Source: Octopus sinensis
Taxonomy: Eukaryota
Direction: 5' to 3'
DNA length: 64,000 nucleotides
NCBI RefSeq assembly: GCF_006345805.1
Contig: NC_043004.1
Span: forward strand, 58,962,001 to 59,026,000
Below, piece by piece: positions 8,314 to 64,000 of the stretch; the stretch's first letter is position 1; every line of letters starts with the position of its first letter. A model generated the notes under the pieces. That model saw only the letters and a program-made list of their open reading frames with translations. It made no database searches and had not been told where the DNA came from. The position numbers and the translations under genes were made by a program.

Positions 8314-8739
8314 GTTATATATATATGTGTGTGTATATATATATACACATATATATATATATAACATGTATATATATATCATATATATATATATAAAACA
8401 TACTACACTCGAGGAGTGGTTGGCGTTAGGAAGGGCATCCAGCTGTAGAAACTCTGCCAGATCAGACTGGAGCCTGGTGTAGCCCCTGGCTTCCCAGACC
8501 CCGGTCGAACCGTCCAACCCGTGCTAGCGTGGAAAACGGACGTTAAACGATGATGATGATGATGATGATGATGTGTATATGTATATTATATATATATATA
8601 GTCAATTTAGGGTAGCAAAAAAATTCAATAGAAATTTATCGCAACCAGCGGCCTGGTGAAAAAGAGAAAATAGTCATCATATATATATATATATAACATG
8701 TATATATCTATCATTATATATATATATCATTTTCATCAC

Positions 8740-8781
8740 AACTGTCTGACGAATGGGAATGTGAAACTCGGAGTATCAGTT
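8740..8781 (+). ncRNA. Minimal type I hammerhead motif, intact core, GUA triplet
   Basis: AACUGU CUGACGA AUG GGAA UGU GAA ACUC G GAGU A UCAGUU. Lies just after a (TA)n tract. Confidence 0.65.
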
Positions 8782-12907: not shown

Positions 12908-12985
<78 letters not shown>

Positions 12986-13067
12986 AAGGGTGAAAAGGAA
13001 CACACGAGTTGATATATATGAAAAAACAAGTCAAAAATAGAAAATGCTAAAATAATTTTATAGTGAA

Positions 13068-13115
13068 CATTTCAGTACCGGTTTCGGTCATTTTGAGACC
13101 TTTTCAACTGTAACG
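13068..13115 (-). ncRNA. Identical hammerhead motif in the Penelope left arm
   Basis: Exact reverse complement of 16180-16227. Confidence 0.7.
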
Positions 13116-13789
13116 ATTAAATAATTAAATTTAGAAAAATTAGAAGAAAAGTTTTTTAAAAGAATATTTCTATAGTAGTGTTCAGATTTAAGTGGCATTC
13201 TGCCTTTCTCTGACTCCTTGTTTGCACTTGTGTGTCGGAGGTCGTTGTGAGTTCTTGGAAGGGTAGTAGAGGAAGAAGGCTGGTGGGGAATGGGGGATGG
13301 GAGAATCTGGGAGTGCCCTGATGGTCGTATTTTGAATGGTCAGTGGCGGCTGGCAGTCTCAGTTCAATTCAGGAGAATATTTATATTGACAGGCTTGTTT
13401 ATAGAATTAGCGTAGGTTTATGGAATTAGCGTAGGTGTTATACTAAAAAACATTAGTGACAAAGTTAAGGGGTAGGGGGTGGAGAAGTAGAAGAAGAAGA
13501 AGAAGAAGGAGAAGGAGAAGGAGAAGATGACGATGATGGTGGTGGTGGTGATGATTATGACGACGATGATGATGATAATGATGAAGAAGAAGGAGGAGAA
13601 GGAGAAGATGGTGGTGATGATGGTGGTGATGATGACGACGACGATGATGATGAAGAAGAAGAGAAGAAGAAGAAGAAAAAAAACAGAGAAGGGGAATATG
13701 AAGGGGTGTAAGTATAGCTATGAAGGGGTGTAATAAGGATTCTATGGAGTGTAATATTTGTGTATATATATTTTTTTCTTTTATTCTAA

Positions 13790-14965
13790 AGTTGAGGTAT
13801 ATTAATTGGTTTGTCGTAGACCGTTTAGGTGGCTTGTATTTGAATAAAGAGATTTTCTTTACTTATTCGTTGTCTCGAGGTTGTATCGTCCCTAAATTGG
13901 TAGAGGGGAAAATTCTGAATTTTGGTGTTTTTTTGTTGGCGCAAGTATCTATGTGTTGGCAAAAGCTATTTTTCTGTTTTGGGGAATTTTTATCTGGGAT
14001 CTGTGCAGGGCCATTCGTTTACGCAAACCATTTTTTGTTTGGCCTATGTACTGCTCTTGACACCGGAGCAGGTTAGTGAGTATATTAGGTTCTCCGAAGC
14101 ACATGTGAAGTTGCTTTTCACTGTAAACCGTTGTCCCTGCTTGAAGGAGAACTCTGATCCCTCAATTAGATAGTCGCATATCCCGCAATTGGGTCTTCCA
14201 CATTTTTTTACTGTCGGCTTCTGTGTTGAGGAGTGAATTCGGGCTTGTGTAAGGAGACTTTTCATGGATCTAGGCTGTCTTTTTTTTTTTATGATCGTGT
14301 GTGTTTGGAGGATTGTGTTCATTCTGTGGTCTTTTTTTAGGAGGGGTATGTTGTGGAGGATGGTGTCGAAGGCTTCGTTATTGAGAGGGTTGTGTGTGGA
14401 GATGTATGGTAAGGCTTTTGGTTGTAAGTTTTTCTTTGATTTGGGATGTCTCAGTTCCTTGATGTTAAGTTGAAGGGCACGTTGAATGCACTTGTCAATA
14501 GTGAAGTGGATAGTTCCTGGTGATTAGGGTATCTTTTAGTTCTTGTAGTCGTGTGTCTCTGGTGTTTGCGTTAGAGACTATAGTGCATATCCTTTTTGCT
14601 AGATGAAGGTGGGGATATTCATCCTGGTGTGTCTGGGGTGGCATGAATTGAATGGAAGATATTGCTTAGTCTGTAGGCTTATAGTATATGTCTGTTTCTA
14701 TTATATTATTAGCTTTCTTAATGAGGATATCGAGGAAGGGGAGTTTTGTTGTTGGCTATATTCCATCGTGAATTGGATGTTTACGTCCAGTCCGTTTAAA
14801 ATTTTCTGGAATTCTATGAGTTTTCTATATTTTTATGCCAAAGGATGAAACAGTCATCTAGATATCTCTTCCAGTTGTTTTCTATGTAGATGGAGAAAGG
14901 GCTGCCATATCTTTCTAGAACCTTACGATACAGACTGATCTCTAGGTATCCTATGACTAGGTTGG
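13790..14965 (-). pseudogene. Disrupted Penelope ORF C-terminus: RT (RYLDD), thumb/linker, Cys-rich motif, GIY-YIG endonuclease
   Basis: ORF pieces 14814-15017 (ANLVIGYLE..WKRYLDDCFILW) and 14044-14322 (KCGRPNCGICDY..NLIYSLTC), with stops and frameshifts between them. Confidence 0.88.
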
Positions 14966-15485
14966 CAATCCTCCAAACACACACGATCATAAAAAGCAAA
15001 AGACAGCCTAGATCCATGAAAAGTCTCCTTACACAAGCCCGAATTCACTCCTCAACACAGAAGCCGACAGTAAAAAAATGTGGAAGACCCAATTGCGGGA
15101 TATGCGACTATCTAATTGAGGGATCAGAGTTCTCCTTCAAGCAGGGACAACGGTTTACAGTGAAAAGCAACTTCACATGTGCTTCGGAGAACCTAATATA
15201 CTCACTAACCTGCTCCGGGTTCAAGAGCAGTACATAGGCCAAACAAAAAATGGTTTGCGTAAACGAATGGCCCTGCACAGATCCCAGATAAAAATTCCCC
15301 AAAACAGAAAAATAGCTTTTAGCCAACACATAGATACTTGCGCCAACAAAAAAACACCAAACTTCAGAATTTTCCCCCTCTACCAATTTAGGGACGATAC
15401 AACCTCGAGACAACGAATAAGTAAAGAAAATCTCTTTATTACAAAATACAAGCCACTTCTAAACGGGTCTACGACAAACAATTAA
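14966..15485 (+). pseudogene. Second (inverted) copy of the GIY-YIG endonuclease region, one frameshift
   Basis: KCGRPNCGICDY..LIYSLTCSG / QEQYIGQTKNGLRKRMALHRSQIK..SQHIDTC..KENLFITKYKPLLN* (ORFs 14890-15237 and 15177-15485). Confidence 0.88.
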
Positions 15486-16179
15486 TATACCTCAACTTTA
15501 GAATAAAAGAAAAAAATATATATACACACAAATATTACACTCCATAGAATCCATTACTAATCAGACCCCTTCATAGCTATATACACACTACACCCTTCAT
15601 ATTCCCCCTTCTCTGTTTTTCTTCTTCTTCTTCTTCCTCTTCTTCTTCGTCATCATCATTATCATCATCATCGTCGTCATCATCATCACCACCATCTTCT
15701 CCTTCTCCTCCTTCTTCTTCATCATCATCATTATCATCACTGGTCGTCATAATCATCACCACCACCACCATCATCGTCATCTTCTCCTTCTCCTTCTCCT
15801 TCTACTTCTCCACCCCTACCCCTTAACTTTGTCACTAATGTTTTTTAGTATAACACCTACGCTAATTCTATAAACCTACGCTAATTCTATAAACAAGCCT
15901 GTCAATATAAATATTCTCCTGAATTAACTGAACTGAGACTGCCAGCCGCCACTGACCATTCAAAATACGACCATCAGGGCACTCCCAGATTCTCCCATCC
16001 CCCATCCCCACCAGCCTTCTTCCTCTACTACCTTCCAAGAACTCACAACGGACCTCGACACACAAGTGCAAACAAGGGAGTCAGAGAAAGGCAGAATGCC
16101 ACTTAAATCTGAACACTACTATAGAAATATTCTTTTAAAAAAACTTTTCTTCTAATTTTTCTAAATTTAATTATTTAAT

Positions 16180-16227
16180 CGTTACAGTTGAAAAGGTCTC
16201 AAAATGACCGAAACCGGTACTGAAATG
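16180..16227 (+). ncRNA. Minimal type I hammerhead motif, U3-A8 core variant, at the 3' end of the Penelope right arm
   Basis: CGUU A CAG UUGAAAA GGUC ucaaaau GACC GAA ACCGGU A CUG A AAUG. Helix II 4 bp, palindromic helix III ACCGGU, GUA triplet. Confidence 0.7.
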
Positions 16228-16291
16228 TTCACTATAAAATTATTTTAGCATTTTCTATTTTTGACTTGTTTTTTCATATATATAATATATA

Positions 16292-16336
<45 letters not shown>

Positions 16337-17820
16337 ATATGCGCGTGTGTGTTTGTGTGTCTGTGTTTGTCCCCTAGCATTGCTTGACAACCGATGCTGG
16401 TGTGTTTATTTTCCCGTTACTTAGCGGTTCGGCAAACGAGACCGATAGAATAAGTACTGGGCTTACAAAAGAATAAGTCCCGGGGTCGAGTTGCTCGACT
16501 AAAGGCGGTGCTCCAGCATGGCCGCAGTCAAATGACTGAAACAAGTAAAAGAGTAAAAGAGAGAGTATATATGTGTGTATGTGTGTGTTTGTGTGTCTGT
16601 GTTTGTGCACCCCATCATCGCTGACAACCGATGCTGGTGTGTTTACATCCCCGTTACTAAGCGGTTCGGCAAAAGAGACCGATAGAATAAGTACTAGGCT
16701 TACAAACAATAAGTCCTGGGGTCGATTTGCTCGACTAAAAGGCGGTGTTCCAGCATGGCCGCAGTCAAATGACTGAAACAAGTAAAAGAGTACGGTATTT
16801 GGCATCCTCGTATTTGTCTATGAAATGAAGTACCTAGCCAAAGGACCCGATGCACTGCCCAGCCGAAGCCCCTTGAGCCGATCGTGATCCAAACATTTTA
16901 ACCACTTGTCTACGAGTTCTCACACTTTATGTATAGTGAATTATGGAAGTGTAGAGTGATATTGATCGATATTAAACACTGACTAATGAAAATTTAGTAT
17001 TAAACATTGATTAGCATCCTTTATTTCGCATTCCATAATTATTTCTAGTTTGTTTTCCAATAATTTATGAATTAATTATATCAACACTAACTCAACTATT
17101 GGTTTTCATGCAGATGGTGTGATTATTTTGCAAATGTTTCTATACTCTTATGCCAATAAATGTGTCTATTTTGAACCTTCATTTAGTTATTCCTCATCAC
17201 TATTTAAGCAAGTATGAGGGAATATACGGTTAGGTGAAGAGTTCAGAATAAAACCAAAACATGTCCAGATTTACCTCCCTTACTTCTTTGAAAATTGAAG
17301 AAAAGTGTTTATTCACTAATGTAATTTTTATCTCATCGTATAATTACATCTAGTGTGCTATTTAATATACTCCCAGCACGAAATATATTTTACAGCAATG
17401 TAACTATGTATGTATGTATGTATGTATGTATGTATGTATGTATGTATGTATGTATGTATGTATGTATGGTGTGTATGTGTATGTATGTATGCATGCATGC
17501 ATGCATACACATACATACATACATACATACATACATACATACATACATACATACATACATAGAGTTGATATTTTGGACAAGCATGAATCGTGCTGAAACT
17601 TGGTTAGTTTACTTCTCAGCACCCATCTATACACACACACACACATATATGTAGGTGTACACGCATATTTATATGTATACTTTATATTCATGCAAATATT
17701 AAAGTAATATCTATCATATAACTAATAAGATTACGAAACAGCTGTAAACGAATCGGAAAAACATCTGTTCTCTCACTTTCCTAGTCTGCCTTCAGATATA
17801 CATACATATATATATATATA

Positions 17821-20285: not shown

Positions 20286-21548
20286 CTATGTATATAAATA
20301 ATGTTTGTGAGCATTTCGTCGTATTTGCTTTTGCCATTCTCCAGTACGCTCGTCAGCTAGTTCCCAGTGGATTTTCTCCAAAGTGAACAATACCAACTTT
20401 AAAGACAAGAAATTGTAATGATCTCTTTGACGTTGACTGATGAGGAATTAGCTACGAATTTTCTGTTTGTTATAATTTTGTAAAATTTTCCGTTTGTTGT
20501 GTATTTATTAAATTTTTGAAATATATATAAATATAATCACACACACACACACATATATATATGTGTGTGTATATATATATGTATGTATATATATATATAT
20601 ATGTACATACATACACACACACATATATATATATGTGTGTATGTATGTATGTACATATATATATATACATACATACAGGCATGCATGCATCCATACATGT
20701 ATGCATACATACATATATATATACTTATACATATGTATGCATGTATGTATTTATAAGTGAGAAAAAAACTGATGAATAAAAAAGTTTTAAAATACATAAA
20801 AACAATAACAATAACAACAAAAAGCAACAAATTGAATCCCAAATTAATTATTTGGCATATTTCTAAAAACGTTTTGAACATCAAACATTCTAAGCCAAAG
20901 AATAAAAAAAAAAACATTGCAAAAATATATTGAAAAACTTCACAAAAATCGTTAATCGCAGAACACAAGCAAATTCTAATAAGGAAGCAAAGACGCAAAG
21001 AACTAGAGATTGCAAAAAATGGTTATAAAAGTTTTAAAAATAGTTAGTTATGAATTTTAAGGACGTTGAATACAACGAATAAGTGACGCAAAAGAAATAA
21101 TTGAACATCTACTAAAAAAAAAAATGGTTATTAAATTCTAAATGTATTAATTAATCCACAAAAGGAACGAAAGATTAGAAAGAGAAAAGCATGATGAAAA
21201 TCGAAGCGGAACTCAAAATAACACGTTGTCCAATAAAAATCCTTATATAACCCTCCACCAAAAACAAAACTAAAACAAATGAAAACAACAACAACAACAC
21301 ACGCACAAAAGTTAAAGGATTATTGGTTTAAAAATAAAAGGGGAATTTTGTAACGAAATATTTATGAGTTTCCCAATATAAGATAATGAAATCGAAAATC
21401 AGGAACTGAAGTATTACGGATTCTAATGAGTTTTGAACTAAAAAAGAAGAATTTTGGTATCTGAAATAATAATAATTTTATGAAGAGAACTGCCAAAATA
21501 AAGCATAAATTATTCGATCCAAGATTAAGTAAGGATACTATAATAAGG

Positions 21549-23868: not shown

Positions 23869-23968
23869 NNNNNNNNNNNNNNNNNNNNNNNNNNNNNNNN
23901 NNNNNNNNNNNNNNNNNNNNNNNNNNNNNNNNNNNNNNNNNNNNNNNNNNNNNNNNNNNNNNNNNNNN
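23869..23968. other. Assembly gap (100 N)
   Basis: Run of exactly 100 N, so the true distance between the 18-nt and 45-nt exons is unknown. Confidence 0.99.
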
Positions 23969-27179: not shown

Positions 27180-28566
27180 AACACAAACCCCCTTCACAGA
27201 TACGCATACATATACAGGTACTAACGAACACACACACACACGCGCGCACGCATGCACAAAGGGAAGTATACACACGCTCGCACTCACGTTGGGACACGCA
27301 GTTACATGCTCGCACATACACAGCACGTTGACTCACGCACTCAAAGACACACACACCTACGAGCACACACAAAGAATCACTCACGCACTCATACAAAAGC
27401 AGGCATGAAAAGAGAGGTACGCACACATATACATGTTAAGAGGAGAACACATACACACACTAAGACAAGAAGGCACACACATAAAAGCACACGCATGCAC
27501 GCTAATACATATACGGTCACAGCGGTAAATGCACTCAGTCACGCACATATACACAGAGGCGAAGCGAAAAAGGCACAAAGGTACACTCAGAGGCACAATG
27601 ATAGAGGCTTACACACACACACACACTACACACATACACACTTAGAGAAATAGCAATAGAGATCTACACACACGCACGCACACATACACACACACAGAGG
27701 CAGAGCGATAGAAGCGCACACAAAGTAACAGTGATAAAGGCACAACACACACACACATACACGCGCACGTACACACACTTACACACACAAAGACGTAAAG
27801 CGGTAGAGGCATACACAGAGTCACAATGATAGAGACACACACACACATACTCACACACACACGTACACACATTTACACACACACACACACACATAAAGGT
27901 AGAGCGATAGAGACACACACAAAGTCACAGTGATTCGGCACACACGCACAGAACCAGTGATAGAGGCACACACAGGAATTGCGAAAGAAGCACATACACA
28001 CAATCATAATGATAGCTGCACACACACAGGCACAGTGATAGCGGCACACACACACACAGGCACAGTGATAGCGGCACACACACACACAGGCACAGTGATA
28101 GCGGCACACACACACACAGGCACAGTGATAGCGGACAACACACCACACAGGCACAGTGATAGCGGCACACACACACACAGGCACAGTGATAGCGGCACAC
28201 ACAACACAAGGCACAGTGATAGCGGCACACACAAGATCCACAGCGATTAAGGCAATGTCACATAGACATATGCATACAATTACGCGCACACACACACACA
28301 CACAAATGCACATACACAGACCCCCCCACACACAAAACACATACACAGACCCACGCACACACACATATACACACACATTCACACACATGCTCACACATAC
28401 GCGCACGGACACACAGACATAAACATACGCAAGCACGCGCGCACACACAAACTCACACACACACACGCACAGTGATAGAGGCACACACACTCAGGCACAG
28501 TGATAGAGGCACGCAAGCGATTAAGGCATTCACAGATAGACATAGGCATACAATTATGCACACACT

Positions 28567-29530: not shown

Positions 29531-29792
29531 ACACACATACACACACACACAACACACACACACACACAACACACACACATACACACACCACACACACACG
29601 AACACACACACATACATATACATATATACGACGGGCTTTTTTCAGTTTCCGCCTACCAAATCCACTCACAAGGCTTTGGTCGGCCCGAGGCTATAGTAGA
29701 AAACACTTGCCCAAGGTGCCACGCTGTGGTACTGAACCCGGAACCATGTGGTTGGTAAGCAAGCTACTTACCACACAGCCACTCCTGTGCAT

Positions 29793-29831
<39 letters not shown>

Positions 29832-34882: not shown

Positions 34883-35363
34883 GATGATGATGAGGAGGAG
34901 GCGGAAGAGGATGAGGATGAGGAGGATGAGGGTGAGGAGGATGAGGGTGAGGATGAGAGTTGGTAATAAAGGAGATGATGCATATTTTCACACGCGCACG
35001 CGCGTTTGCTAGAAGTGGTGTGCCTCACGCAAATTCACACGCACATGCGCAAACACACAGACACAAACGCACGCAGGCATCCATCTACATACATCCACAC
35101 ACCCTATCCACACACCTTATCCCAGTTTCTTTCATCCTGCCTTTATTATAATCTCCTTTATATCATTTTCCTTTCCTCTCAGCCCCCATTAAAACGTCAT
35201 CGTTTCCCAAATTCCTTTCTCTTTATTTCTCGTCTCTTTCTCATTAAAAAAAAATTAATCTTTTACTTGTTTCACTCATTAGACCGCGGCAATGCTTGGG
35301 GACAACATTGAAGGGTTTACTCAAACAAATCTACCTCGGTACTCTTTTTTTTTTGGGGGGGGG

Positions 35364-37280
35364 GATCTGGTACTACTTTTCTCTATGATCTGGTACTTTT
35401 TTCTTTTCGATCTGGTACTTCTTTTCTCTATGATCTGGTACTTTTTTCTTTTCGATCTGGTACTTCTTTTCTCTAGGATCTGATACTTTTTCTTTTCGAT
35501 CTGGTACTTCTTTTCTCTATGATCTGGTACTTTTTTCTTTTCGATCTGGTACTTCTTTTCTCTATGATCTGTTACTTTTTTCTTTTCGATCTGGTACTTC
35601 GTTTATCTATGATCTGGTACTTTTTCTTTTCGATCTGGTACTTCTTTTCTCTATGATCTGGTACTTTTTTCTTTTCGATCTGGTACTTCTTTTCTCTATG
35701 ATCTGCTACTTTTTTCTTTTTGATCTGGTACTTCTTTTCTCTATGATCTGGTACATTTTTCTTTTTGATCTGGTACTTCTTTTCTCTATGATCTGGTACT
35801 TTTTCTTTTTGATCTGGTACTTCTTTTCTCTATGATCTGGTACTTTTTTCTTTGTCATCTGGTACTTCTTTTCTCTATGATCTGGTACATTTTTCTTTTT
35901 GATCTGGTACTTCTTTTCTCTATGATCTGGTACATTTTTCTTTTCGATCTGGTACTTCTTTTCTCTATGATCTGTTACTTTTTTCTTTTCGATCTGGTAC
36001 TTCTTTTCTCTATGATCTGTACTTTTTTCTTTTCGATCTGGTACTTCTTTTCTCTATGATCTGGTACATTTTTCTTTTTGATCTGGTACTTCTTTTCTCT
36101 ATGATCTGGTACTTTTTTCTTTTGATCTGGTACTTCTTTTCTCTATGATCTGGTACTTTTTTCTTTTTCATCTGGTACTTCTTTTCTCTATGATCTGGTA
36201 CATTTTTCTTTTTGATCTGGTACTTCTTTTCTCTATGATCTGGTACTTTTTTCTTTTCGATCTGGTACTTCTTTTCTGTATGGTCTGGTACATTTTTCTC
36301 TTTGATCTGGTACTTCTTTTCTCTATAATCTGGTACTTTTTTCTTTTCGATCTGGTACTTCTTTTCTCTATGATCTGGTACTTTATTCTTTTCGATCTGG
36401 TACTTCTTTTCTCTATGATCTGTTACTTTTTTCTTTTTGATCTAGTACTTCTTTTCTCTATGACCTGGTACTTTTTTCTTTTGATCTGGTACTTCTTTTC
36501 TCTATGATCTGGTACATTTTTCTTTTTGATCTGGTACTTCTTTTCTCTATGATCTGGTACTTCTTTCTTTTCGATCTGGTACTTCTTTTCTCTATGATCT
36601 GGTACATTTTTCTTTTTGATCTGGTACTTCTTTTCTCTATGATCTGTTACTTTTTTCTTTTCGATCTGGTACTTCTTTTTCTCTATGATCTGGTAATTTG
36701 TTCTTTTTGATCTGTTACTTCTTTTCTCTATGATCTGGTACTCTTTTCTTTTCGATCTGGTACTTCTTTTCTCTATAATCTGATACTTTTTCTTTTTGAT
36801 TTGGTACTTCTTTTCTCTATGATCTGATAGTTTTTCTTTTCGATCTTGTACTTCTTTTCTCTATGATCTGGTACTTTTTTCTTTTCGATCTGGTACTTCT
36901 TTTCTCTATGATCTGGTACTTTTTTTCTTTTCGATCTGGTACTTCTTTTCTCTATGATCGGGTACTTTTTTCTTTTTGATCTGGTACTTCTTTTCTCTAT
37001 GATCTGGTACTTTTTTCTTTTCGATCTGGTACTTCTTTTCTCTATAATCTGACACTTTTTCTTCTTGATTTGGTAGTTCTTTTCTCTATGATCTGATACT
37101 TTTTCTTTTCGATCTGGTACTTTTTTCTTTTCGATCTGGTACTTCTTTTCTCTATGATCTGTTACTTTATTCTTTTCGATCTGGTACTTTTTTTCTCTAT
37201 GATCTGGTACTTTTTTCTTTTCGATCTGGTACTTCTTTTCTCTATGATCTGGTACTTTTTCCTTTCTGATCTGGTATTTC
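35364..37280. repeat. 45-bp minisatellite (22+23-bp dimer of gatctggtac cores), about 42 units
   Basis: Unit gatctggtacttttttcttttc + gatctggtacttcttttctctat, read directly. Confidence 0.95.
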
Positions 37281-40204: not shown

Positions 40205-41400
40205 TAATTATCATATGGAAACTCTCAGCTTGTTTTGCTGGGTATGATGGAGAGTGTCAGCTGTTTGCAGCCAGCAGACTAAGGTGACACTTGTTTATTG
40301 GTCATGCTTCAAGAACCCTGCGAAGAATTCTTGCAGTTCCAAGCAATGCTGATTTTTGTAGATGTTCTACCTTCACACTTGTACCGATCTGTTTCAGCCA
40401 TGTTTGTAGTTGAGTGCTGATACCTCCAAGTGCACCAATTATTATTGGTATCACGTCTGCTCTCTTCATTGACCACAACATTCGTATTTCCCACTTCAAA
40501 TCGTCATAGTTGTTTATTTCTTCTTCTTCTTTCACATTGATCCTGTTGTCATCTGGGCATGCTATATGTCGATTATCATACATGTTCTTTCTTTTTTATT
40601 CACCACAACATTGTCCAGTTCCCGATGTCTGGTCAAGTGATCGCACTGGATCATTGTATCCCACAGGATTTTGCAGTTCTCATTTTCGGTAACTCCTGGA
40701 ATTTGCACTTACCACGTCTTTGTTCTTTGTAGGCTGTGGTTTCCACAGAGCTCCCAACGGATCATTCTTGCCACACTGTCATGGAGTCTTCTGTTATTTC
40801 TTTGTGCCAATTTCGGGCTTTCGCTAACGATGTGTCATACCGTTTCACCTGTCTCACCGGTCTCACCACACATTCGGCATTTGTCGCTATCGGTATTGTT
40901 GTCTGTTCTGCGCTTCATATAGTTGATCCTTAACGCTTGTTCCTGAGCTGCGCATATGAGTGCTTCTGTCTCTATCTTCAGGTCACTTCTCTACGTCCAT
41001 AGCCATCGGTTCTCTGTATGTCTTGGTGCTGACATCTCTGTCCGTAGATTTTCTTTCCCTTCCATGCTTTTTATTGTTTTTTTTCTTCATTTCCTGTTTA
41101 CATTTTTCTCTAGTTACACAGTTTTCAGTTTTGATGATACCGGCCTTCTTCGTGTGTTTCAACAGTGGCTCCACGGCATTTTTATATACCACCCTAAGCT
41201 GTCTTCCTCGGCTTCGATACAGTACTGGCAACTGATCAGACCTCTCCCACCTTTTATTCTGGACAAGTACAGCCTATCGGTGTCACTTATTCATTTTGTT
41301 CATCATGTACATACGTATTTCTCATTTTCCTGTTTTACTAGAAACATTGAAGCATATCTGAGGAATCCGGAGCTAATTGAACTTATTTTCTGCGTGACTT
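40205..41400 (-). mobile_element. 5'-truncated, frameshifted R4/Dong (Rex6-like) non-LTR retrotransposon: CCHC knuckle + restriction-like endonuclease
   Basis: C-terminus KWEIRMLWSMKRADVIPIIIGALG..LQKSALLGTARILRRVLEA*. Upstream frames give CRMCGETGETVWHIVS and ILWDTMIQCDH..PD. Confidence 0.85.
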
Positions 41401-44240: not shown

Positions 44241-46017
44241 AACTGGTACTTATTTTATCGACTCCGAAAGAATGAAAGGTAATATCGACCTCGGCGGAAT
44301 TTTGAATTCAGAACGTAAAGACGGACGAAATGCCGCTAAGCATTTTTACCGGCGTGCTAACGATTCTTCGAGCTAGCCTCCTACACTTCTTCAATTTTGG
44401 AAAAGGAAATTATCATTGGGATAATGAAGCCCTATATAACTTTAAAATTTGTCTTTAAAAAGTGGAGTGGTCATGGCTGGAATGTTTTTGATCATAAATT
44501 TGCTAAACTAAGACTGACCTAAGGTTAAACGAGATCAGCAGCAATAACAGCAGCACGTAGATTATTTTGAGCCAGCAAGGGATGCTCCATACTTTTGACT
44601 TGCTAGAAATAGTAGTCATATTTCACTGAAATCACAGCCCAACGCCTTTGCGTTGGATAATGTAGTGTTTAATTATATTAAATGCTGAGCTACAATAGTA
44701 TGATGGTCATAACTGGAACGCTTTCGATCATAGATTTGCTCAAGCAACATCTGCAATGGTAATGCAAAAATCACTATGTGGTCGCTTTACTTGCTGGAAA
44801 GAGTAGTCATGGCTCCCTCAAATCCTAACAAAGCATCGATACATTAGAAAGTGTAGAAGCAGATATATGAATAATAAAAATGAATAAACGTAATGGTCGC
44901 GGCTGGAACACTTTTGATCATACGCTTGTTCTGTGAAGATTGATAGGAGAGGTTTAAACAACAACAATAACATCAAGAATTGCAGCATCAACAAATTTAA
45001 TCAATTTATTGATGGTAATTAAATCAGCTGTCTTATTTATCATTGATCGCAATAAAATTAAAAGTATTTGATTTATTACAGTTATATTGTAAACTTTTAC
45101 ATGCCTTGCCAGTTACGTCAAACATTATAATTAAGTTAAGGTTAGTGTTAATATATCTAATGCCGGAAACATTAGAAAGCTAATTAGAAATTATTATGCA
45201 ATGAAGCTTAACTAAATAAATAAATAGAATAAAATGAATAAATGACAAATATTACTTTAAAATTTTTTTCTGCAAGGGAGACAAATCGCAGCATATTTGT
45301 GTTTTTATTATTACGTCATCAGCACATTACCAGGCATTATCAGAAGCTACCGCCATTGTGACATGTAGACGGTATCCCACATGAATGTTAGTATGATATG
45401 AACTCAAGCGGCAGCAAGATGGCAGTTAAAACACATCAGACTTCATTGATCTACACATCTTACAATGCATTAGCAGACATTCTATTTCTTTTGTTTCTAG
45501 TCGGCCAATGAGCACCGCTCAACCGAAAACTTGGTCGGTATAGACATGAAATACTCAATTTAAGTTGAAACCGGTAGGAAAAGATCTATGAATACGTTTC
45601 TTAAATATTGTTTGTTTTTGAAATTATGCACTAAAATTAAACGATATATTATGAAATTAGTCATAAAATTCTTGGTGCATTATCCGTCTTTTAACCTTTA
45701 TTTTTCTTCGTATATGACGTGTAAATTTTACTGAATCCTGGGTTCATAATAATTATCATAGATGTTTACAGTGTTGAAGTCTAGTCATTAGTAGTCTTTT
45801 GCTCTTACTCTTTTACTTGTTTCAGTCATTTGACTGTGGCCATGTTGGAGCACCGCCTTTAGTCGATCAAATCGACCCCAGGACTTATTCTTTGTAAGCC
45901 TAGTACTTATTCTATCGGTATCTTTTGGCGAACCATTAAGTTACGGGGACGTAAACACACCAGCATTGGTTGTCAAGCGATGTTGGGGGGGCAAACACAG
46001 ACACACAAACATAAACA

Positions 46018-46075
<58 letters not shown>

Positions 46076-46732
46076 CATATATACGACGGGCTTCTTTCAG
46101 TTTCTATCAACCAAATCCACTCACAAGTCTTTGGTCGGCTCGAGGCTATAGTAGAAGGCACTTGTCCAAGGTGCCGCGCAGTGGGACTGAACCCAGAACC
46201 ATGTGGTTCCTAAGCAAGCTACTTACCACATAGCCACTCCTACGCCTACAAGTTTTTTCTTTTCTTGTTATGGATCTTTGGAATATCTGTAAAAGTTCAA
46301 GTCGGAAGTATGTTTCAAATTGGAGTTTTATGTATATGTTATTTAACGCTGAAAGAATAAAGCTGTACACACATGGAGCATTAGTTTTATGGACTGTGTC
46401 ACGAATTACTGTCTCTACCTGTTGTTATTGCTGCTGATCTCGTTTAACCTTAGGTCAGTCTTAGTTTAGCAAATTTATGATCAAAAACATTCCAGCCATG
46501 ACCACTCCATTTTTTAAAGACAAATTTTAAAGCTATATAGGGATTCATTATCCCAATGATAATTTCCTTTTTCCAAAATTGAAGAAGTGTAGGAGGCTAG
46601 CTCGAAGAATCGTTAACACGCCGGTAAAAATGCTTAGCGGCATTTCGTCCGTCTTTACGTTCTGAATTCAAAATTCCGCTGAGGTCGATATTACCTTTCA
46701 TTCTTTCGGAGTCGATAAAATAAGTACCAGTT
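44241..46732. repeat. Local inverted duplication: arms 44241-44549 and 46423-46732
   Basis: The arms share the same SINE-B/family-H junction and private variants (ttttgaattc, gattcttcgagctagc). Confidence 0.88.
44375..44975 (+). repeat. Three tandem copies of repeat family H (ctagaaatagcagccaaa..ggtcatggctggaatg..gatcata)
   Basis: The motif recurs at about 44460, 44600-44740 and 44780-44960. Fragments also at about 7040, 26380 and 60720. Confidence 0.55.
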
Positions 46733-52285: not shown

Positions 52286-53596
52286 CGTAAAAGTATAATA
52301 TTCAATTTAGGAAAAGTACTGAGTAATCCTCAGGTTAATGCAAAATTGGTTTTATTACTAGACATAAAAGTATACATTTACACAGACACAGACACACACA
52401 CGTACACGCACATACACGTATACACACACAAATATACACGTGTGTGTCTATATGTATATGTGTATATATATCCTCGCACGTAAATATACAGAGCAACAGC
52501 GGACGGACTTAGAACATCGTATATGATTATGCTGGATATTTTTGGGATACATTAAGAGAGTTCAGAGCTGGCGATACTCTCTCTTTTACTCTTTTACTTG
52601 TTTCAGTCATTTGACTGCGGCCATGCTGGAGCACTGCCTTTAATCGAGCAACTCGACCAGGAACTTATTCTTTTGTAAGCCCAGTACTTATTCTATCGGT
52701 CTCTTTTACCGAACCGCTAAGTAACGGGGACATAAACACACCAGCATCGGTGGTCAAGCAAACACAGACGCACAAACACACACACGCATATATATATATA
52801 TACATATATACGACGGGCTTCTTTCAGTTTCCGTCTACCAAATCCACTCACAAGGCTTTGGTCGGCCCGAGACTATAGTAGAAGACACTTGCCCAAGGTG
52901 CCACGCAGTGAGACTGAACCCGGAACCATGTGGTTGGTAAACAAGCTACTTAACACACAGCCACTCCTGCGCCTATTGAATAAAAAAGAAAAAAAAATTA
53001 TAAATCGTCTGTCAGTGACGGCATTTAAGTTGACGATGACGAAATTACAGTAGACGACAACGTAATTGAGACAAATGCTAGAGAATTTAAGGTCTTTGGT
53101 GATGTACGCATGTTAAAACCCATATCAATTTTCGACAAGAGGAATGAAAGATAAAACCTGGTATTTCAGTAGACAGAAGTTCAAAACGTTGAAGAGGGTG
53201 ACGTGAAGTTAGCGGGTAGGTTTGATCTTTGATAGCAATCGCACATGTTTCGCTGCTATTAGCCATCCCCACATAAAATAAATAAATAAATAAATAAAGC
53301 CACTCACGACTTGCGAGATATTAGAATAATTAATAACTATAGTATTTTGTGTAAAAATAATTCAATGATTAAATGAATTATAATAATGAGACTGGAAAAT
53401 TTCTCAAGCGTGCATGCCCTTGAAGTATACATAAATATGTTGCAGGGTTTCGTATTTAATGCAGTGAACCGAAAATTCATTTTGTTCAATTGAAATTACC
53501 GCATTGACAAGAAAAATAATTAGCGCTAATAAAAGTATGATTTATCGTAATCGCAAGGCACAGAAGTATATGTACGTATGTATGTATGTATGTATG

Positions 53597-54833: not shown

Positions 54834-54868
54834 ATTTAACGTTTCGAGCGGAGCTCTTCGTCAGAAAC
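54834..54868 (-). ncRNA. Minimal type I hammerhead motif, intact core
   Basis: GUUU CUGACGA A GAGC ucc GCUC GAA ACGU U AAAU. Inside a TA-flanked ~250-bp element (about 54730-54980). Confidence 0.6.
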
Positions 54869-60670: not shown

Positions 60671-60829
60671 GCTGAACTTAAATATATTATATATATATAT
60701 ATATACATTCAAAACATATAAGGGATGGCTATAATAGAACATCCGACTCACTAGAAAGAGCAGCTAAACTCCAAACCACTAATAGTTGTAATTCTGAAAT
60801 GGAAAGAGAAATAAAAACATTTACCCTCT

Positions 60830-60886
60830 CCTTTCTGGACTATGCATAGTTTCGGCAATCTTTTGTTGCACTCATCAGCAGAAAAG
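60830..60886 (-). ncRNA. Type I hammerhead ribozyme, canonical core, GUC cleavage triplet
   Basis: Minus strand reads CUUUUCUG CUGAUGA G U GCAA caaaaga UUGC C GAA ACUAUGCAUAGU C CAGAAAGG: 8-bp helix I, 5-bp helix II, helix III a perfect 12-nt palindrome. Confidence 0.85.
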
Positions 60887-61180
60887 CCAAGGACTACCAT
60901 ATATTCACAAGGCGATAACGAGCATGCCTCGCGTCTATATGCTATAAATTTTCAAAATCCACCGCATTCGCGCGGTTTACTCAGCAGTAAATATAAACTG
61001 CCAATTTAATTTCAAAATTAGCCAAAAAATCATTAATTAATAAATTTTAGGGTAGCAAAATATTCGAGAAAAATTCTCCGCTACCAGCGCGCTCCGAAAC
61101 GTAAGATCATTCTCAGTAGAGGGTTCGTCACTCCACTCCAGTTTTCTGCATATAAATACATACATACATACATATATATA

Positions 61181-61219
<39 letters not shown>

Positions 61220-61246
61220 TAGATATATATATATATATATATAGAT

Positions 61247-61277
<31 letters not shown>

Positions 61278-61857
61278 ATATATATATATATACATTTATT
61301 ATATACATATAGGTGAGAGAGGAGAGTAAAGTAATAAGATAAATTGGAGGGGGATCAATAAGTGTATTCCTCAACCTTTAGACATTATATATTGTCAATT
61401 ATTATTTACTAAAAGGACAGTCAAACAATATACATACATGTATAATATATTGTGCTTTACATATATAATATATAAAATATAAAAATATCAGCAATTATTA
61501 TAATAGATAACATAGCAATAGAAATTGGGATAATATCTTACACCTGTTTCAGCCGAGGCAAAAATACCTCATTCTACCTTTATCTCTCCAGTTGACTGAA
61601 GTAATTAGTAGATGAAACTGAGGTTCTTGGGTGTTTCTCTAGGCTTCGCCAGAGATTTTAGAATGTACATAAGGTTAAGTTATAAATATAAATACACACA
61701 CTTTATTTTCTCTCCTTGTTTCTTTCTGTGTTCCTTTCTGAGGAAAAGCGTAGGCTAAAAACGTTAAAGACTTCTCACTTCCCGAGCGTTATACTAATAT
61801 ATCTGTTTGTTGTCTACACCACCTGTCTTCGTCTTTTGTTTTTTTTTTGTGAATTCT

Positions 61858-63289: not shown

Positions 63290-64000
63290 ATTATCAATTT
63301 TTCACCAAGTATCTCATATGCAAAGGGGAACCATTTAAGGCGAATTCAAATTATTCATTATATTAAAAGGCTTAGATAAATAATTTACTTGCCACAACTG
63401 AACTCATTAGAAATAGTATCTAAAAAAACTTTTTTAAAAACTATTCGAAATACTTAAAGAAAATCTCTCTCATATAGTGTTTGCTCAATTCAACTACGAA
63501 AGTATGGGGGTAAAGACATTAAAAAATCAAATGCAAAGGTTATGAAGAACGTACGTTTCTAGATAGTCAACTCGACATTTCTTTCTCCAGCTCAGAACCC
63601 TTCGGTTTGGAGTTTGAAAACACTGAAGTGGGAGCATACCCTTCGCTTCTTATCGCTTTTGAAGATTCTGCTCGAACTATCAGTGCCAGCAAACTCAAAA
63701 TATGCAAGCGACGGAATTTTGCTATCCCCTTTTCCACCGCGTGGTTAAAATCAGCAAACACTAGGTTTTTTCCCGGTAAAATCCGAAGCATTATAAATAG
63801 AGATAGATTGAATTATAAATTTCAACAATTGAGAGGGTAAAATTAATTAATTATTACTCAATTTCACCAAGTTATTCAGTATGCAAAGGGACCATTTAAG
63901 GCGAATTCAAATTATTACATTATATAAAAGGGCTTAGTAAAAATAAATTACTTTGCCACATACTGAACTCATTAGAAATAGTAGCTAAAAAACTTTTTTA
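63290..64000 (-). mobile_element. Homologous ~560-bp unit with >140-bp terminal redundancy (runs off the window end)
   Basis: About 63290-63435 is repeated at about 63850-64000 with small indels. Abuts (TA)n. Internal hammerhead motif. Confidence 0.55.
63545..63595 (-). ncRNA. Homologous hammerhead motif (A6G core change)
   Basis: CUGAG CUGGAGA A AGA aau GUC gaguu GAC ua UCU A GAA ACGUACGU U CUU. Helices covary with 30701-30760. Confidence 0.55.

What the first reader, a model, noticed from the sequence alone, without database searches (positions are those of the whole stretch)
60830..60886. Fully canonical hammerhead on the host gene's sense strand
Seen: all core nucleotides are canonical (CUGAUGA, G10.1-C11.1, GAAA, GUC), with an 8-bp helix I. 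The 12-nt palindromic helix III can fold as a monomer (ACUA/UAGU, UGCA loop) or as a dimer. Predicted cut between 60838 and 60837. It lies in a ~340-bp non-coding element (about 60810-61150); part of that element recurs at about 8600-8690. Inference: if this position is still inside the NOS1AP-like transcript, the intron could self-cleave co-transcriptionally.
Basis: partly seen in the sequence, partly recalled or inferred. Interest (0 to 1): 0.85.

Follow-up and report, generated by a model that had tools for sequence, protein, structure and literature searches.

The report
Retroelement-borne type I hammerhead ribozyme copy
A complete self-cleaving hammerhead ribozyme motif really is present, but it looks like a single stray copy of a well-known class of small animal retroelements rather than a new gene-regulating device.

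Summary
The motif is real. Minus strand 60886-60830 carries every conserved hammerhead core base, an 8-bp helix I, a 12-nt palindromic helix III and a predicted cut between 60838 and 60837. Rfam Hammerhead_1 scores 21.8 bits, below its 34-bit cut-off. A motif this complete is expected fewer than 0.001 times per 64-kb window by chance.

It sits in a roughly 430-bp, 38% GC, non-coding element wedged between (TA)n tracts. That element folds unusually well only on the ribozyme strand. A fragment of it lies in another (TA)n at 8601-8677. The window also holds a Penelope-like retroelement in (TA)n with its own hammerhead.

Best reading: a solo copy of a Penelope-dependent, retrozyme-type element. 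Its ribozyme is built to cut as a dimer: the single-copy catalytic fold is 5 kcal/mol worse than a competing fold, while two copies fold into a double hammerhead.

Whether it lies in a NOS1AP-like intron cannot be decided. The only such exon is 59.7 kb downstream and no upstream exon is in the window. No homologues were retrievable, so family size, covariation and activity are untested. This is a new member of a known kind, of modest interest.

The parts
60830..60886 (-). Type I hammerhead ribozyme motif (helix I open): core plus the three proximal helices
   Evidence: Sequence read. It is the only hit of my descriptor scan in the window. Rfam Hammerhead_1 scores 21.8 bits, E = 0.017 on 901 nt.
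60822..60894 (-). Extended hammerhead: helix I continues beyond a 2x2 internal loop (GG/AG) with 4 more pairs. The internal loop is a candidate partner for loop 2.
   Evidence: RNAfold keeps the extended helix I in both the MFE and the centroid structure. The loop-loop contact is inference only.
60872..60878 (-). Core strand CUGAUGA (C3 to A9)
60854..60871 (-). Helix II: G10.1-C11.1, bulged U10.2, GCAA/UUGC, 7-nt loop CAAAAGA
60839..60853 (-). GAAA core strand, then the 12-nt palindromic helix III ACUAUGCAUAGU. This is a weak hairpin as a monomer and a 12-bp duplex as a dimer.
   Evidence: hairpin -0.3 kcal/mol, homodimer duplex -17.3 kcal/mol.
60837..60838 (-). Predicted scissile bond: 3' of C17 (60838), 5' of C1.1 (60837)
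   Evidence: Follows from hammerhead numbering applied. Cleavage was not tested.
60721..61149 (-). Non-coding element of about 430 bp and 38% GC that carries the ribozyme about 265 nt from its 5' end. It is strongly self-paired on the ribozyme strand only.
   Evidence: Minus-strand RNA: MFE -120.9 kcal/mol, z = -2.8, 0 of 100 shuffles as good. Plus strand: -82.0 kcal/mol, z = -0.65. GC. No protein homologues for its six-frame stretches.
60682..60705 (.). (TA)n tract flanking the element on one side
61146..61292 (.). (TACA)n followed by (TA)n (the (TA)n is 61172-61292), flanking the element on the other side
8601..8677 (-). Fragment of about 77 bp related to element positions 61040-61115, itself wedged between (TA)n tracts (8583-8600 and 8679-8695). 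It has no ribozyme.
   Evidence: (E = 7e-5).
13012..16283 (.). Context, not the same element: a head-to-head pair of 5'-truncated Penelope-like elements (GIY-YIG endonuclease ORFs), flanked by (TA)n 12908-12981 and 16276-16340
   Evidence: Inverted repeats I1 and I21. ORFs. Pfam GIY-YIG 19.8 bits, below its 22.6 cut-off. Homologues at 46-63% identity carrying PF01541.
16174..16238 (+). Context: minimal type I hammerhead at the 3' end of the Penelope-like element, UUGAAAA...GAAACCGGUA (the U3-A8 core variant). The mirror copy is at 13057-13121 on the minus strand.
   Evidence: Rfam HH9-like, 19.7 bits. The same UUGAAAA...GAAAC-palindrome motif lies 3' of the endonuclease ORF in L001 and L002. 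U3-A8 covariation is documented in PMC3088659.
949..1122 (-). NOS1AP/CAPON-like coding exon, the only one detected in the window. It is on the same strand as the ribozyme and 59.7 kb downstream of it.

Best explanation
The motif is the ribozyme of a small, non-coding, non-autonomous retroelement of the animal 'non-LTR retrozyme' or Penelope-dependent kind. Here it is present as a single (monomeric) copy that landed in a (TA)n microsatellite.

In source copies such elements lie in tandem. Their multimeric transcripts are cut once per unit by the type I hammerhead, and the unit-length RNA is circularised by a host ligase. That RNA is then copied back into DNA by the Penelope-like element machinery, which prefers (TA)n targets.

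This ribozyme's palindromic helix III means it is built to cut as a dimer of two neighbouring or trans copies. At this locus there is one copy, so it is most likely a poorly active passenger. If it is transcribed on the minus strand it could cut at 60838/60837 at low efficiency.

Shown: the motif, its statistics, the strand-specific fold, the (TA)n flanks, and the co-resident Penelope-like element with a hammerhead. Inferred: mobilisation by Penelope-like elements, tandem source copies, dimeric cleavage and circular RNA.
For: - The core is complete and all three helices are present.
- Chance expectation is at most 0.001 per window.
- Hammerhead_1 is the best Rfam ribozyme hit.
- Two copies co-fold into a double hammerhead, while the monomer fold is disfavoured. 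Newt, axolotl and Penelope-like element ribozymes behave this way (PMC7229834; PMC6155905).
- The element is about 430 bp, 38% GC and non-coding. Described retrozyme units are about 170-400 bp with under 45-50% GC (PMC7229834).
- Only the ribozyme-sense RNA is unusually self-paired: z = -2.8 against -0.65. Retrozyme RNAs are described as highly self-paired.
- The element, its fragment at 8601-8677 and the Penelope-like pair at 13-16.3 kb all sit in (TA)n. (TA)n is the reported preferred target of Neptune and Naiad Penelope-like elements (PMC8557442).
- A Penelope-like element with its own hammerhead is in the same window. Retrozymes co-occur with and derive from such elements.
Against: - There is no second full copy and no tandem arrangement in 64 kb.
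- The only relative is a 45-77-nt fragment.
- No homologue was found in two metagenome scans, one viral scan and a protein-space search. A multi-copy family is therefore unproven.
- The Rfam score is below the gathering cut-off.
- Helix II has a bulge.
- There is no sequence similarity to the Penelope-like element in the window.
- At about 430 bp the unit is slightly above the 170-400 nt range quoted for retrozyme RNAs.
- Cleavage is untested.
Confidence: 0.5

Rival explanations
1. It is the 5'-truncated 3' tail (pseudo-LTR end) of an autonomous Penelope-like element from a family other than the one at 13-16 kb, not a dedicated non-autonomous retrozyme. The ribozyme belongs to the autonomous element's terminal region, and only the last 430 bp or so were inserted.
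For: Penelope-like elements carry hammerheads near their 3' ends, are commonly 5'-truncated, and target (TA)n (PMC8557442). In this window the Penelope-like ribozyme lies about 40 nt from the (TA)n junction, and the candidate lies about 110 nt from its downstream junction. Retrozymes and pseudo-LTRs are reported to be homologous, so the two readings grade into each other.
Against: - Hammerheads of Penelope-like elements are usually minimal and lack a real helix III (PMC6155905). This one has 4 bp plus a tetraloop, the 'canonical' form ascribed to invertebrate retrozymes.
- There is no endonuclease or reverse-transcriptase remnant in the element's six frames.
- There is no similarity to the co-resident Penelope-like element.
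Confidence: 0.2
2. It is a chance match. AT-rich, repeat-rich non-coding DNA happens to spell a hammerhead consensus with pairing flanks, and there is no ribozyme biology here.
For: - The core pattern alone is expected 0.43 times per window.
- Rfam scores are sub-threshold.
- The monomer catalytic fold is not the MFE, and the 86-nt fold has z = -0.03.
- There is no homologue to show conservation.
- At 0.0008 per 64 kb, a genome of several gigabases would still hold tens of chance motifs. The first stage presumably read many windows.
Against: - The full motif was found 0 times in 2500 random windows at the observed helix lengths.
- Independent context agrees with a real element: the strand-specific fold on the ribozyme strand, the (TA)n-bounded unit with a second fragment in (TA)n, and a hammerhead-bearing Penelope-like element in the same window.
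- Type I hammerheads number in the thousands in many invertebrate genomes.
Confidence: 0.15
3. It is a domesticated intronic ribozyme. The hammerhead sits in a long intron of the NOS1AP-like gene on the sense strand and cleaves the nascent pre-mRNA. This would tune transcript output or processing, as proposed for the HH9 and HH10 ribozymes in amniote introns.
For: It is on the same strand as the NOS1AP-like exon at 949-1122. Conserved intronic type I hammerheads derived from retroelements are a precedent (PMC6155905).
Against: - No upstream exon lies in the window, so the intronic position is unproven.
- A single copy is predicted to fold poorly into the active form.
- The element looks like a recent insertion into a microsatellite.
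- No orthologous conservation can be shown.
- Retrozymes are reported as depleted from genes overall.
Confidence: 0.05

Closest known systems
Metazoan non-LTR retrozymes (Cervera and de la Pena 2020, PMC7229834; Li et al. 2026 preprint 10.64898/2026.07.22.740005)
   Same: - A type I hammerhead with a real, though short, helix III.
- A non-coding, low-GC unit a few hundred bp long.
- RNA of ribozyme polarity that is highly self-paired.
- Co-residence with Penelope-like elements.
- Dispersed monomer copies are known and are often intronic.
   Different: - Here only one unit is seen and there is no tandem array.
- The unit, at about 430 bp, is slightly longer than the quoted 170-400 nt.
- Family size, circular RNA and activity are unknown.
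- Helix II carries a bulged U.
Newt/axolotl satellite hammerheads and minimal hammerheads of Penelope-like elements (dimeric cleavage)
   Same: Helix III is palindromic, so two copies form an extended intermolecular helix III. The dimer fold is predicted to be strongly favoured over two monomers.
   Different: Those have a helix III of 0-2 bp. This one has 4 bp plus a tetraloop, so some monomeric activity is conceivable. The sequences are unrelated apart from the core and an A-rich loop 2 (CAAAAGA here, UCAAAAU in the window's Penelope-like element, CAAAAA in the HH9 consensus).
Rfam Hammerhead_1 (RF00163), seeded on Schistosoma Sm-alpha, newt and cricket satellites
   Same: The match is full-length to all 45 model positions with every core position identical.
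   Different: It scores 21.8 bits against a gathering score of 34, with longer inserts in helices II and III than the model expects.
Amniote intronic hammerheads HH9/HH10 (RECK, CTCL, DTNB introns)
   Same: They are type I, retroelement-derived and on the sense strand of a host gene.
   Different: Those are conserved across orthologous introns and act as stable monomers. Here neither conservation nor intronic position can be shown, and the monomer fold is weak.

Membership tests
Hammerhead ribozyme, type I | All conserved core nucleotides: C3 U4 G5 A6 N7 G8 A9, G12 A13 A14, A15.1-U16.1, and H17 not G | tested here: met
   CUGAUGA, GAAA, A15.1-U16.1 and C17 were read directly. The exact core pattern occurs once in the window.
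Hammerhead ribozyme, type I | Three helices around the core, with helix I open-ended and helices II and III capped | tested here: met
   Helix I is 8 bp (plus 4 more), helix II is 5 bp with one bulged U, and helix III is 4 bp with a UGCA loop. The helix II defect is a blemish, not a failure.
Hammerhead ribozyme, type I | Reaches the curated Rfam gathering score (RF00163, 34 bits) | tested here: not met
   No hit at gathering score. The permissive search gives 21.8 bits.
Hammerhead ribozyme, type I | Core conservation and helix covariation among homologues | tested here: inconclusive
   No homologue carrying the ribozyme could be retrieved. The collections on hand do not hold this animal's genome.
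Hammerhead ribozyme, type I | Mg2+-dependent self-cleavage 3' of position 17, giving 2',3'-cyclic phosphate and 5'-OH ends | not testable with these tools
   This needs in vitro transcription or end-specific RNA sequencing.
Non-LTR retrozyme | Short, non-coding, low-GC unit (about 170-400 bp, under 45-50% GC) carrying a type I hammerhead | tested here: met
   About 430 bp (slightly long) and 38% GC. No ORF homologues.
Non-LTR retrozyme | Head-to-tail tandem copies (dimers to multimers), so that two cuts release a unit | tested here: not met
   A single unit with no internal or adjacent repeat. An apparent upstream half-motif is not significant, p = 0.59. Monomeric derivatives of retrozymes are, however, described.
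Non-LTR retrozyme | Unit RNA of ribozyme polarity is highly self-paired | tested here: met
   z = -2.8 on the minus strand against -0.65 on the plus strand.
Non-LTR retrozyme | Multi-copy family expressed as linear and circular RNA | not testable with these tools
   Only one extra fragment is seen in 64 kb. No genome or transcriptome of the source is available.
Terminal region (pseudo-LTR) of a Penelope-like element | Contiguous with, or homologous to, an element encoding reverse transcriptase and GIY-YIG endonuclease | tested here: not met
   There is no coding remnant in the element. There is no similarity to the Penelope-like element at 13-16.3 kb. Other Penelope-like families of this genome could not be examined.
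Terminal region (pseudo-LTR) of a Penelope-like element | Insertion into the (TA)n microsatellite target | tested here: met
   There is (TA)n on both sides. The preference is reported in PMC8557442.
Conserved intronic hammerheads (HH9/HH10 type) | Located in an intron on the sense strand and conserved in orthologues | tested here: inconclusive
   It is on the same strand as the NOS1AP-like exon, but no upstream exon lies in the window. Orthologous loci are unavailable.

The most novel reading that the evidence does not exclude
The lone ribozyme is active in cis within a >62-kb intron of the NOS1AP-like gene. It cleaves a fraction of nascent pre-mRNA. That would make it an invertebrate counterpart of the amniote intronic hammerheads, caught soon after a retroelement insertion, and a natural case of a mobile ribozyme throttling a neuronal signalling gene.
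Probability: 0.05. Interest if true: 0.6.

Novelty: new member of a known kind. Interest (0 to 1): 0.25.

Why it matters
If confirmed, it adds one more lineage to the very large set of animal type I hammerheads carried by Penelope-dependent retroelements. It also gives a clean example of such an element, and of a Penelope-like element, sitting in (TA)n targets within one 64-kb stretch.

It would matter more only if the copy proved to be intronic, sense-oriented and active. It would then be a test case for how hosts tolerate or exploit a self-cleaving RNA inside a long pre-mRNA.

Tried and rejected
1. Rfam at gathering threshold over the whole window found nothing.

2. A first descriptor without helix defects missed the motif because of the helix II bulge.

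3. Searches for homologues all came back empty:
- two metagenome pattern scans, one specific to helix III and one to helix II;
- one viral-contig scan;
- a protein-space search with concatenated six-frame stretches of the element, meant to catch ORFs called on other copies.

4. I looked for a second, decayed hammerhead about 106 nt upstream (UUUACUGCUGAGU...). Its local alignment score is ordinary, p = 0.59, so I rejected it.

6. Related Penelope-like loci L001-L004 gave no Rfam hammerhead hit at E <= 1. A pattern scan did find the UUGAAAA...GAAAC motif in two of them.

7. The tRNA scan and the bacterial promoter/terminator scan were uninformative.

8. I first took the core of the Penelope-like element's ribozyme (UUGAAAA) for a dead, mutated core. 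I rejected this because U3-A8 is a documented compensatory variant of the C3-G8 pair and is conserved in relatives.

Full report
**What is in the sequence.** I read the finding on the minus strand.
- Positions 60886-60830 spell CUUUUCUG-CUGAUGA-G(U)GCAAcaaaagaUUGCC-GAAA-CUAugcaUAG-UC-CAGAAAGG.
- Every conserved hammerhead position is present: C3-A9, G10.1-C11.1, G12-A14, A15.1-U16.1 and C17.
- Helix I is the open helix, so this is a type I hammerhead.
- Helix I has 8 pairs, one of them G-U. After a 2x2 internal loop it continues for 4 more pairs, out to 60894/60822.
- Helix III is the 12-nt palindrome ACUAUGCAUAGU.
After G10.1-C11.1 there is a bulged U (or a U/C mismatch) before GCAA/UUGC. A strict descriptor therefore misses the motif, while one allowing a single defect finds it.

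**Is it more than chance?**
- The bare core pattern is not significant: 0.43 expected per window.
- The complete motif is significant. In 2500 random 64-kb sequences with the window's dinucleotide make-up, scanned on both strands, I found 0.0044 motifs per window with helices of at least 5, 4 and 3 pairs. I found 0.0008 with helix I of at least 6 pairs, and none at the observed 8, 5 and 4 pairs.
- Rfam agrees in direction but not in strength. There is no hit at gathering score. Hammerhead_1 scores 21.8 bits (cut-off 34) with E = 0.017 for 901 nt against all 4227 families.
- Rescaled by me to 64 kb and the five hammerhead families only, that E-value is of the order of 1e-3.
- At these rates a multi-gigabase genome would still contain tens of accidental motifs. 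Context therefore has to carry part of the argument.

**Context of the element.**
- The ribozyme lies in a non-coding stretch bounded by (TA)n 60682-60705 on one side. On the other side (TACA)n begins at about 61146 and runs into (TA)n 61172-61292. That gives a unit of about 430 bp (60721-61149) with 38% GC.
- Its six reading frames have no relatives among 5.8 billion protein clusters.
- The RNA of ribozyme polarity folds much better than shuffled controls: -120.9 kcal/mol, z = -2.8, 0 of 100 shuffles as good. The complementary RNA does not: -82.0 kcal/mol, z = -0.65. Such strand asymmetry, which depends on G-U pairs, is what one expects of an element selected as an RNA of that polarity.
- Within the window the element's only relative is a fragment of about 77 bp at 8601-8677 (80% over 45 nt, E = 7e-5). 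That fragment is itself wedged between two (TA)n tracts.

**A Penelope-like element in the same window.**
- At 13012-16283 there is a head-to-head pair of 5'-truncated retroelement copies. The arms are 99% identical.
- Their ORFs carry a CxxC finger and a GIY-YIG endonuclease. Pfam gives 19.8 bits, under the 22.6 cut-off. Homologues at 46-63% identity are annotated PF01541, and one neighbours an RVT_1 ORF.
- The pair is flanked by (TA)n 12908-12981 and 16276-16340.
- Near each 3' end Rfam finds an HH9-like match of 19.7 bits: UUACAG-UUGAAAA-GGUCucaaaauGACC-GAAA-CCGG-UA-CUGAAA. This is a minimal type I hammerhead with a palindromic, loop-less helix III.
- Its core reads U3...A8 instead of C3...G8. 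Those two positions pair in the active structure, and U3-A8 is a documented natural covariation (PMC3088659).
- The same UUGAAAA...GAAAC-palindrome motif follows the endonuclease ORF in two related contigs from other samples. Its helix II differs but still pairs: GGUC/GACC, GCAU/AUGC and ACCA/UGGU.
- This genome therefore hosts hammerhead-bearing Penelope-like elements that insert into (TA)n. Published work reports that (TA)n preference for the Neptune and Naiad clades (PMC8557442).

**How the ribozyme most likely works.**
- For the 69-nt motif the catalytic secondary structure is worth -12.4 kcal/mol. The MFE is a competing fold at -17.7 kcal/mol.
- The helix III hairpin alone contributes -0.3 kcal/mol.
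- Two copies co-fold, as their MFE (-43.1 kcal/mol), into a double hammerhead joined by a 12-bp intermolecular helix III.
- This is the behaviour described for newt and axolotl satellite ribozymes and for minimal hammerheads of Penelope-like elements. These cleave poorly as monomers and well as dimers (PMC7229834; PMC6155905).
- These energies ignore the tertiary core and any contact between loop 2 and the helix I internal loop, so monomer activity is not excluded.
- I infer that the ribozyme evolved to process tandem or multimeric transcripts of its element. The lone copy here is at best a weak cis-cleaver.

**Comparison with what is known.**
- Most classical type I hammerheads of animals lie in short (about 170-400 nt), low-GC, non-coding repeats called non-LTR retrozymes.
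- These are expressed as highly self-paired linear and circular RNAs. They co-exist with autonomous Penelope-like elements that carry atypical minimal hammerheads (PMC7229834).
- A 2026 preprint derives retrozymes from the terminal regions of Penelope-like elements. It also reports dispersed monomer copies, about 43% of them intronic in Xenopus (10.64898/2026.07.22.740005).
- The present element matches this kind in ribozyme type, size class, GC content, lack of coding capacity, self-pairing, target site and company.
- It fails one defining feature at this locus, tandem repetition. Two others, family size and circular RNA, could not be tested.
- I therefore describe it as a solo copy of a retrozyme-type, Penelope-dependent element. 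The main alternative is the truncated tail of another Penelope-like family. Against that alternative stand its well-formed helix III and the absence of coding remnants.

**The host-gene question.**
- The ORF at 934-1554 on the minus strand contains a NOS1AP/CAPON-like exon. It is 72% identical to the human coiled-coil region over 58 residues when I query with the human sequence recalled from memory.
- It is 66-79% identical to invertebrate proteins, one of which is named carboxyl-terminal PDZ ligand of neuronal nitric oxide synthase.
- No other part of that protein, in particular no PTB-domain exon, matches anywhere in the window.
- The ribozyme is on the gene's strand but 59.7 kb upstream of its only visible exon. 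Whether it is intronic depends on exons that would lie beyond position 64000. I cannot tell.

**Limits.**
- None of the DNA collections on hand contains this animal's genome. Conservation, covariation, copy number and expression are therefore all untested.
- All homologue searches were empty.
- An apparent decayed second ribozyme half 106 nt upstream is not significant.

**Verdict.** This is a genuine-looking type I hammerhead of the familiar retroelement-borne kind. It is a new member of a known class and is not shown to regulate the host gene. Interest is modest.

Noticed in passing
window 13012-16283; ribozyme motifs at 13057-13121 (-) and 16174-16238 (+); L001 about 1511-1560; L002 about 1549-1600: A head-to-head pair of 5'-truncated Penelope-like elements sits in a (TA)n tract. 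Its 3'-terminal minimal hammerhead has the core UUGAAAA, which is the U3-A8 compensatory variant of the C3-G8 pair. The variant core, a covarying helix II and a palindromic helix III recur 3' of the endonuclease ORF in two related contigs from other samples.
   Followed up: partly
window 14890-15485 (+) and mirror copy 14322-13720 (-): The GIY-YIG endonuclease reading frame of the Penelope-like element is split by a frameshift between '...LIYSLTCSG' and 'YIGQTKNG...'. The frameshift is identical in both 99%-identical arms.
   Followed up: no
window 54838-54864 (-), 8746-8775 (+), 20309-20356 (-): Three weaker hammerhead-like strings (CUGACGA...GAAA) are present. The first has a loop-less ACGU helix III and lies about 105 nt upstream of a (TA)n tract, but it has an extra A before helix II and gets no Rfam hit. 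The others have poor helices. They are probably decayed copies or chance matches.
   Followed up: partly
window 60721-61149: The predicted RNA structure of the element is strongly strand-asymmetric: z = -2.8 on the ribozyme strand against -0.65 on the other. It includes a GGUAGC...GCUACC hairpin at 61052-61087 that is largely kept in the fragment at 8601-8677.
   Followed up: partly
window 23869-23968: A run of 100 N, which is an assembly gap.
   Followed up: no
whole window: Microsatellite load is very high: 13.9% of bases lie in tandem repeats of period 6 or less. These include (TA)n, (CA)n, (TATC)n, (TACA)n, (ATC)n and (AAT)n.
   Followed up: no
window 46032-46248, 52759-52975, 29577-29793, 2322-2539 and others: A dispersed repeat family of about 200-220 bp occurs in both orientations, with at least 8-10 copies at 70-97% identity. 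Copies often abut microsatellites. It is probably a SINE-like element, although no tRNA-like gene was detected by ARAGORN.
   Followed up: no
window 35263-36900: A minisatellite of about 40 head-to-tail copies of a 45-bp unit.
   Followed up: no
window 27960-28260: A tandem array of a 30-bp unit, CACACAGGCACAGTGATAGCGGCACACACA, embedded in CA-rich sequence.
   Followed up: no
window 44241-44553 and 46419-46732: A pair of inverted repeats of about 310 bp (96-98% complementary) encloses about 1.9 kb. This could be a foldback or terminal-inverted-repeat element.
   Followed up: no
window 40302-40583 (-): A 93-aa ORF resembles, from memory, the conserved C-terminal tail of an invertebrate non-LTR (RTE/CR1-like) retrotransposon protein. 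It has no Pfam match.
   Followed up: no
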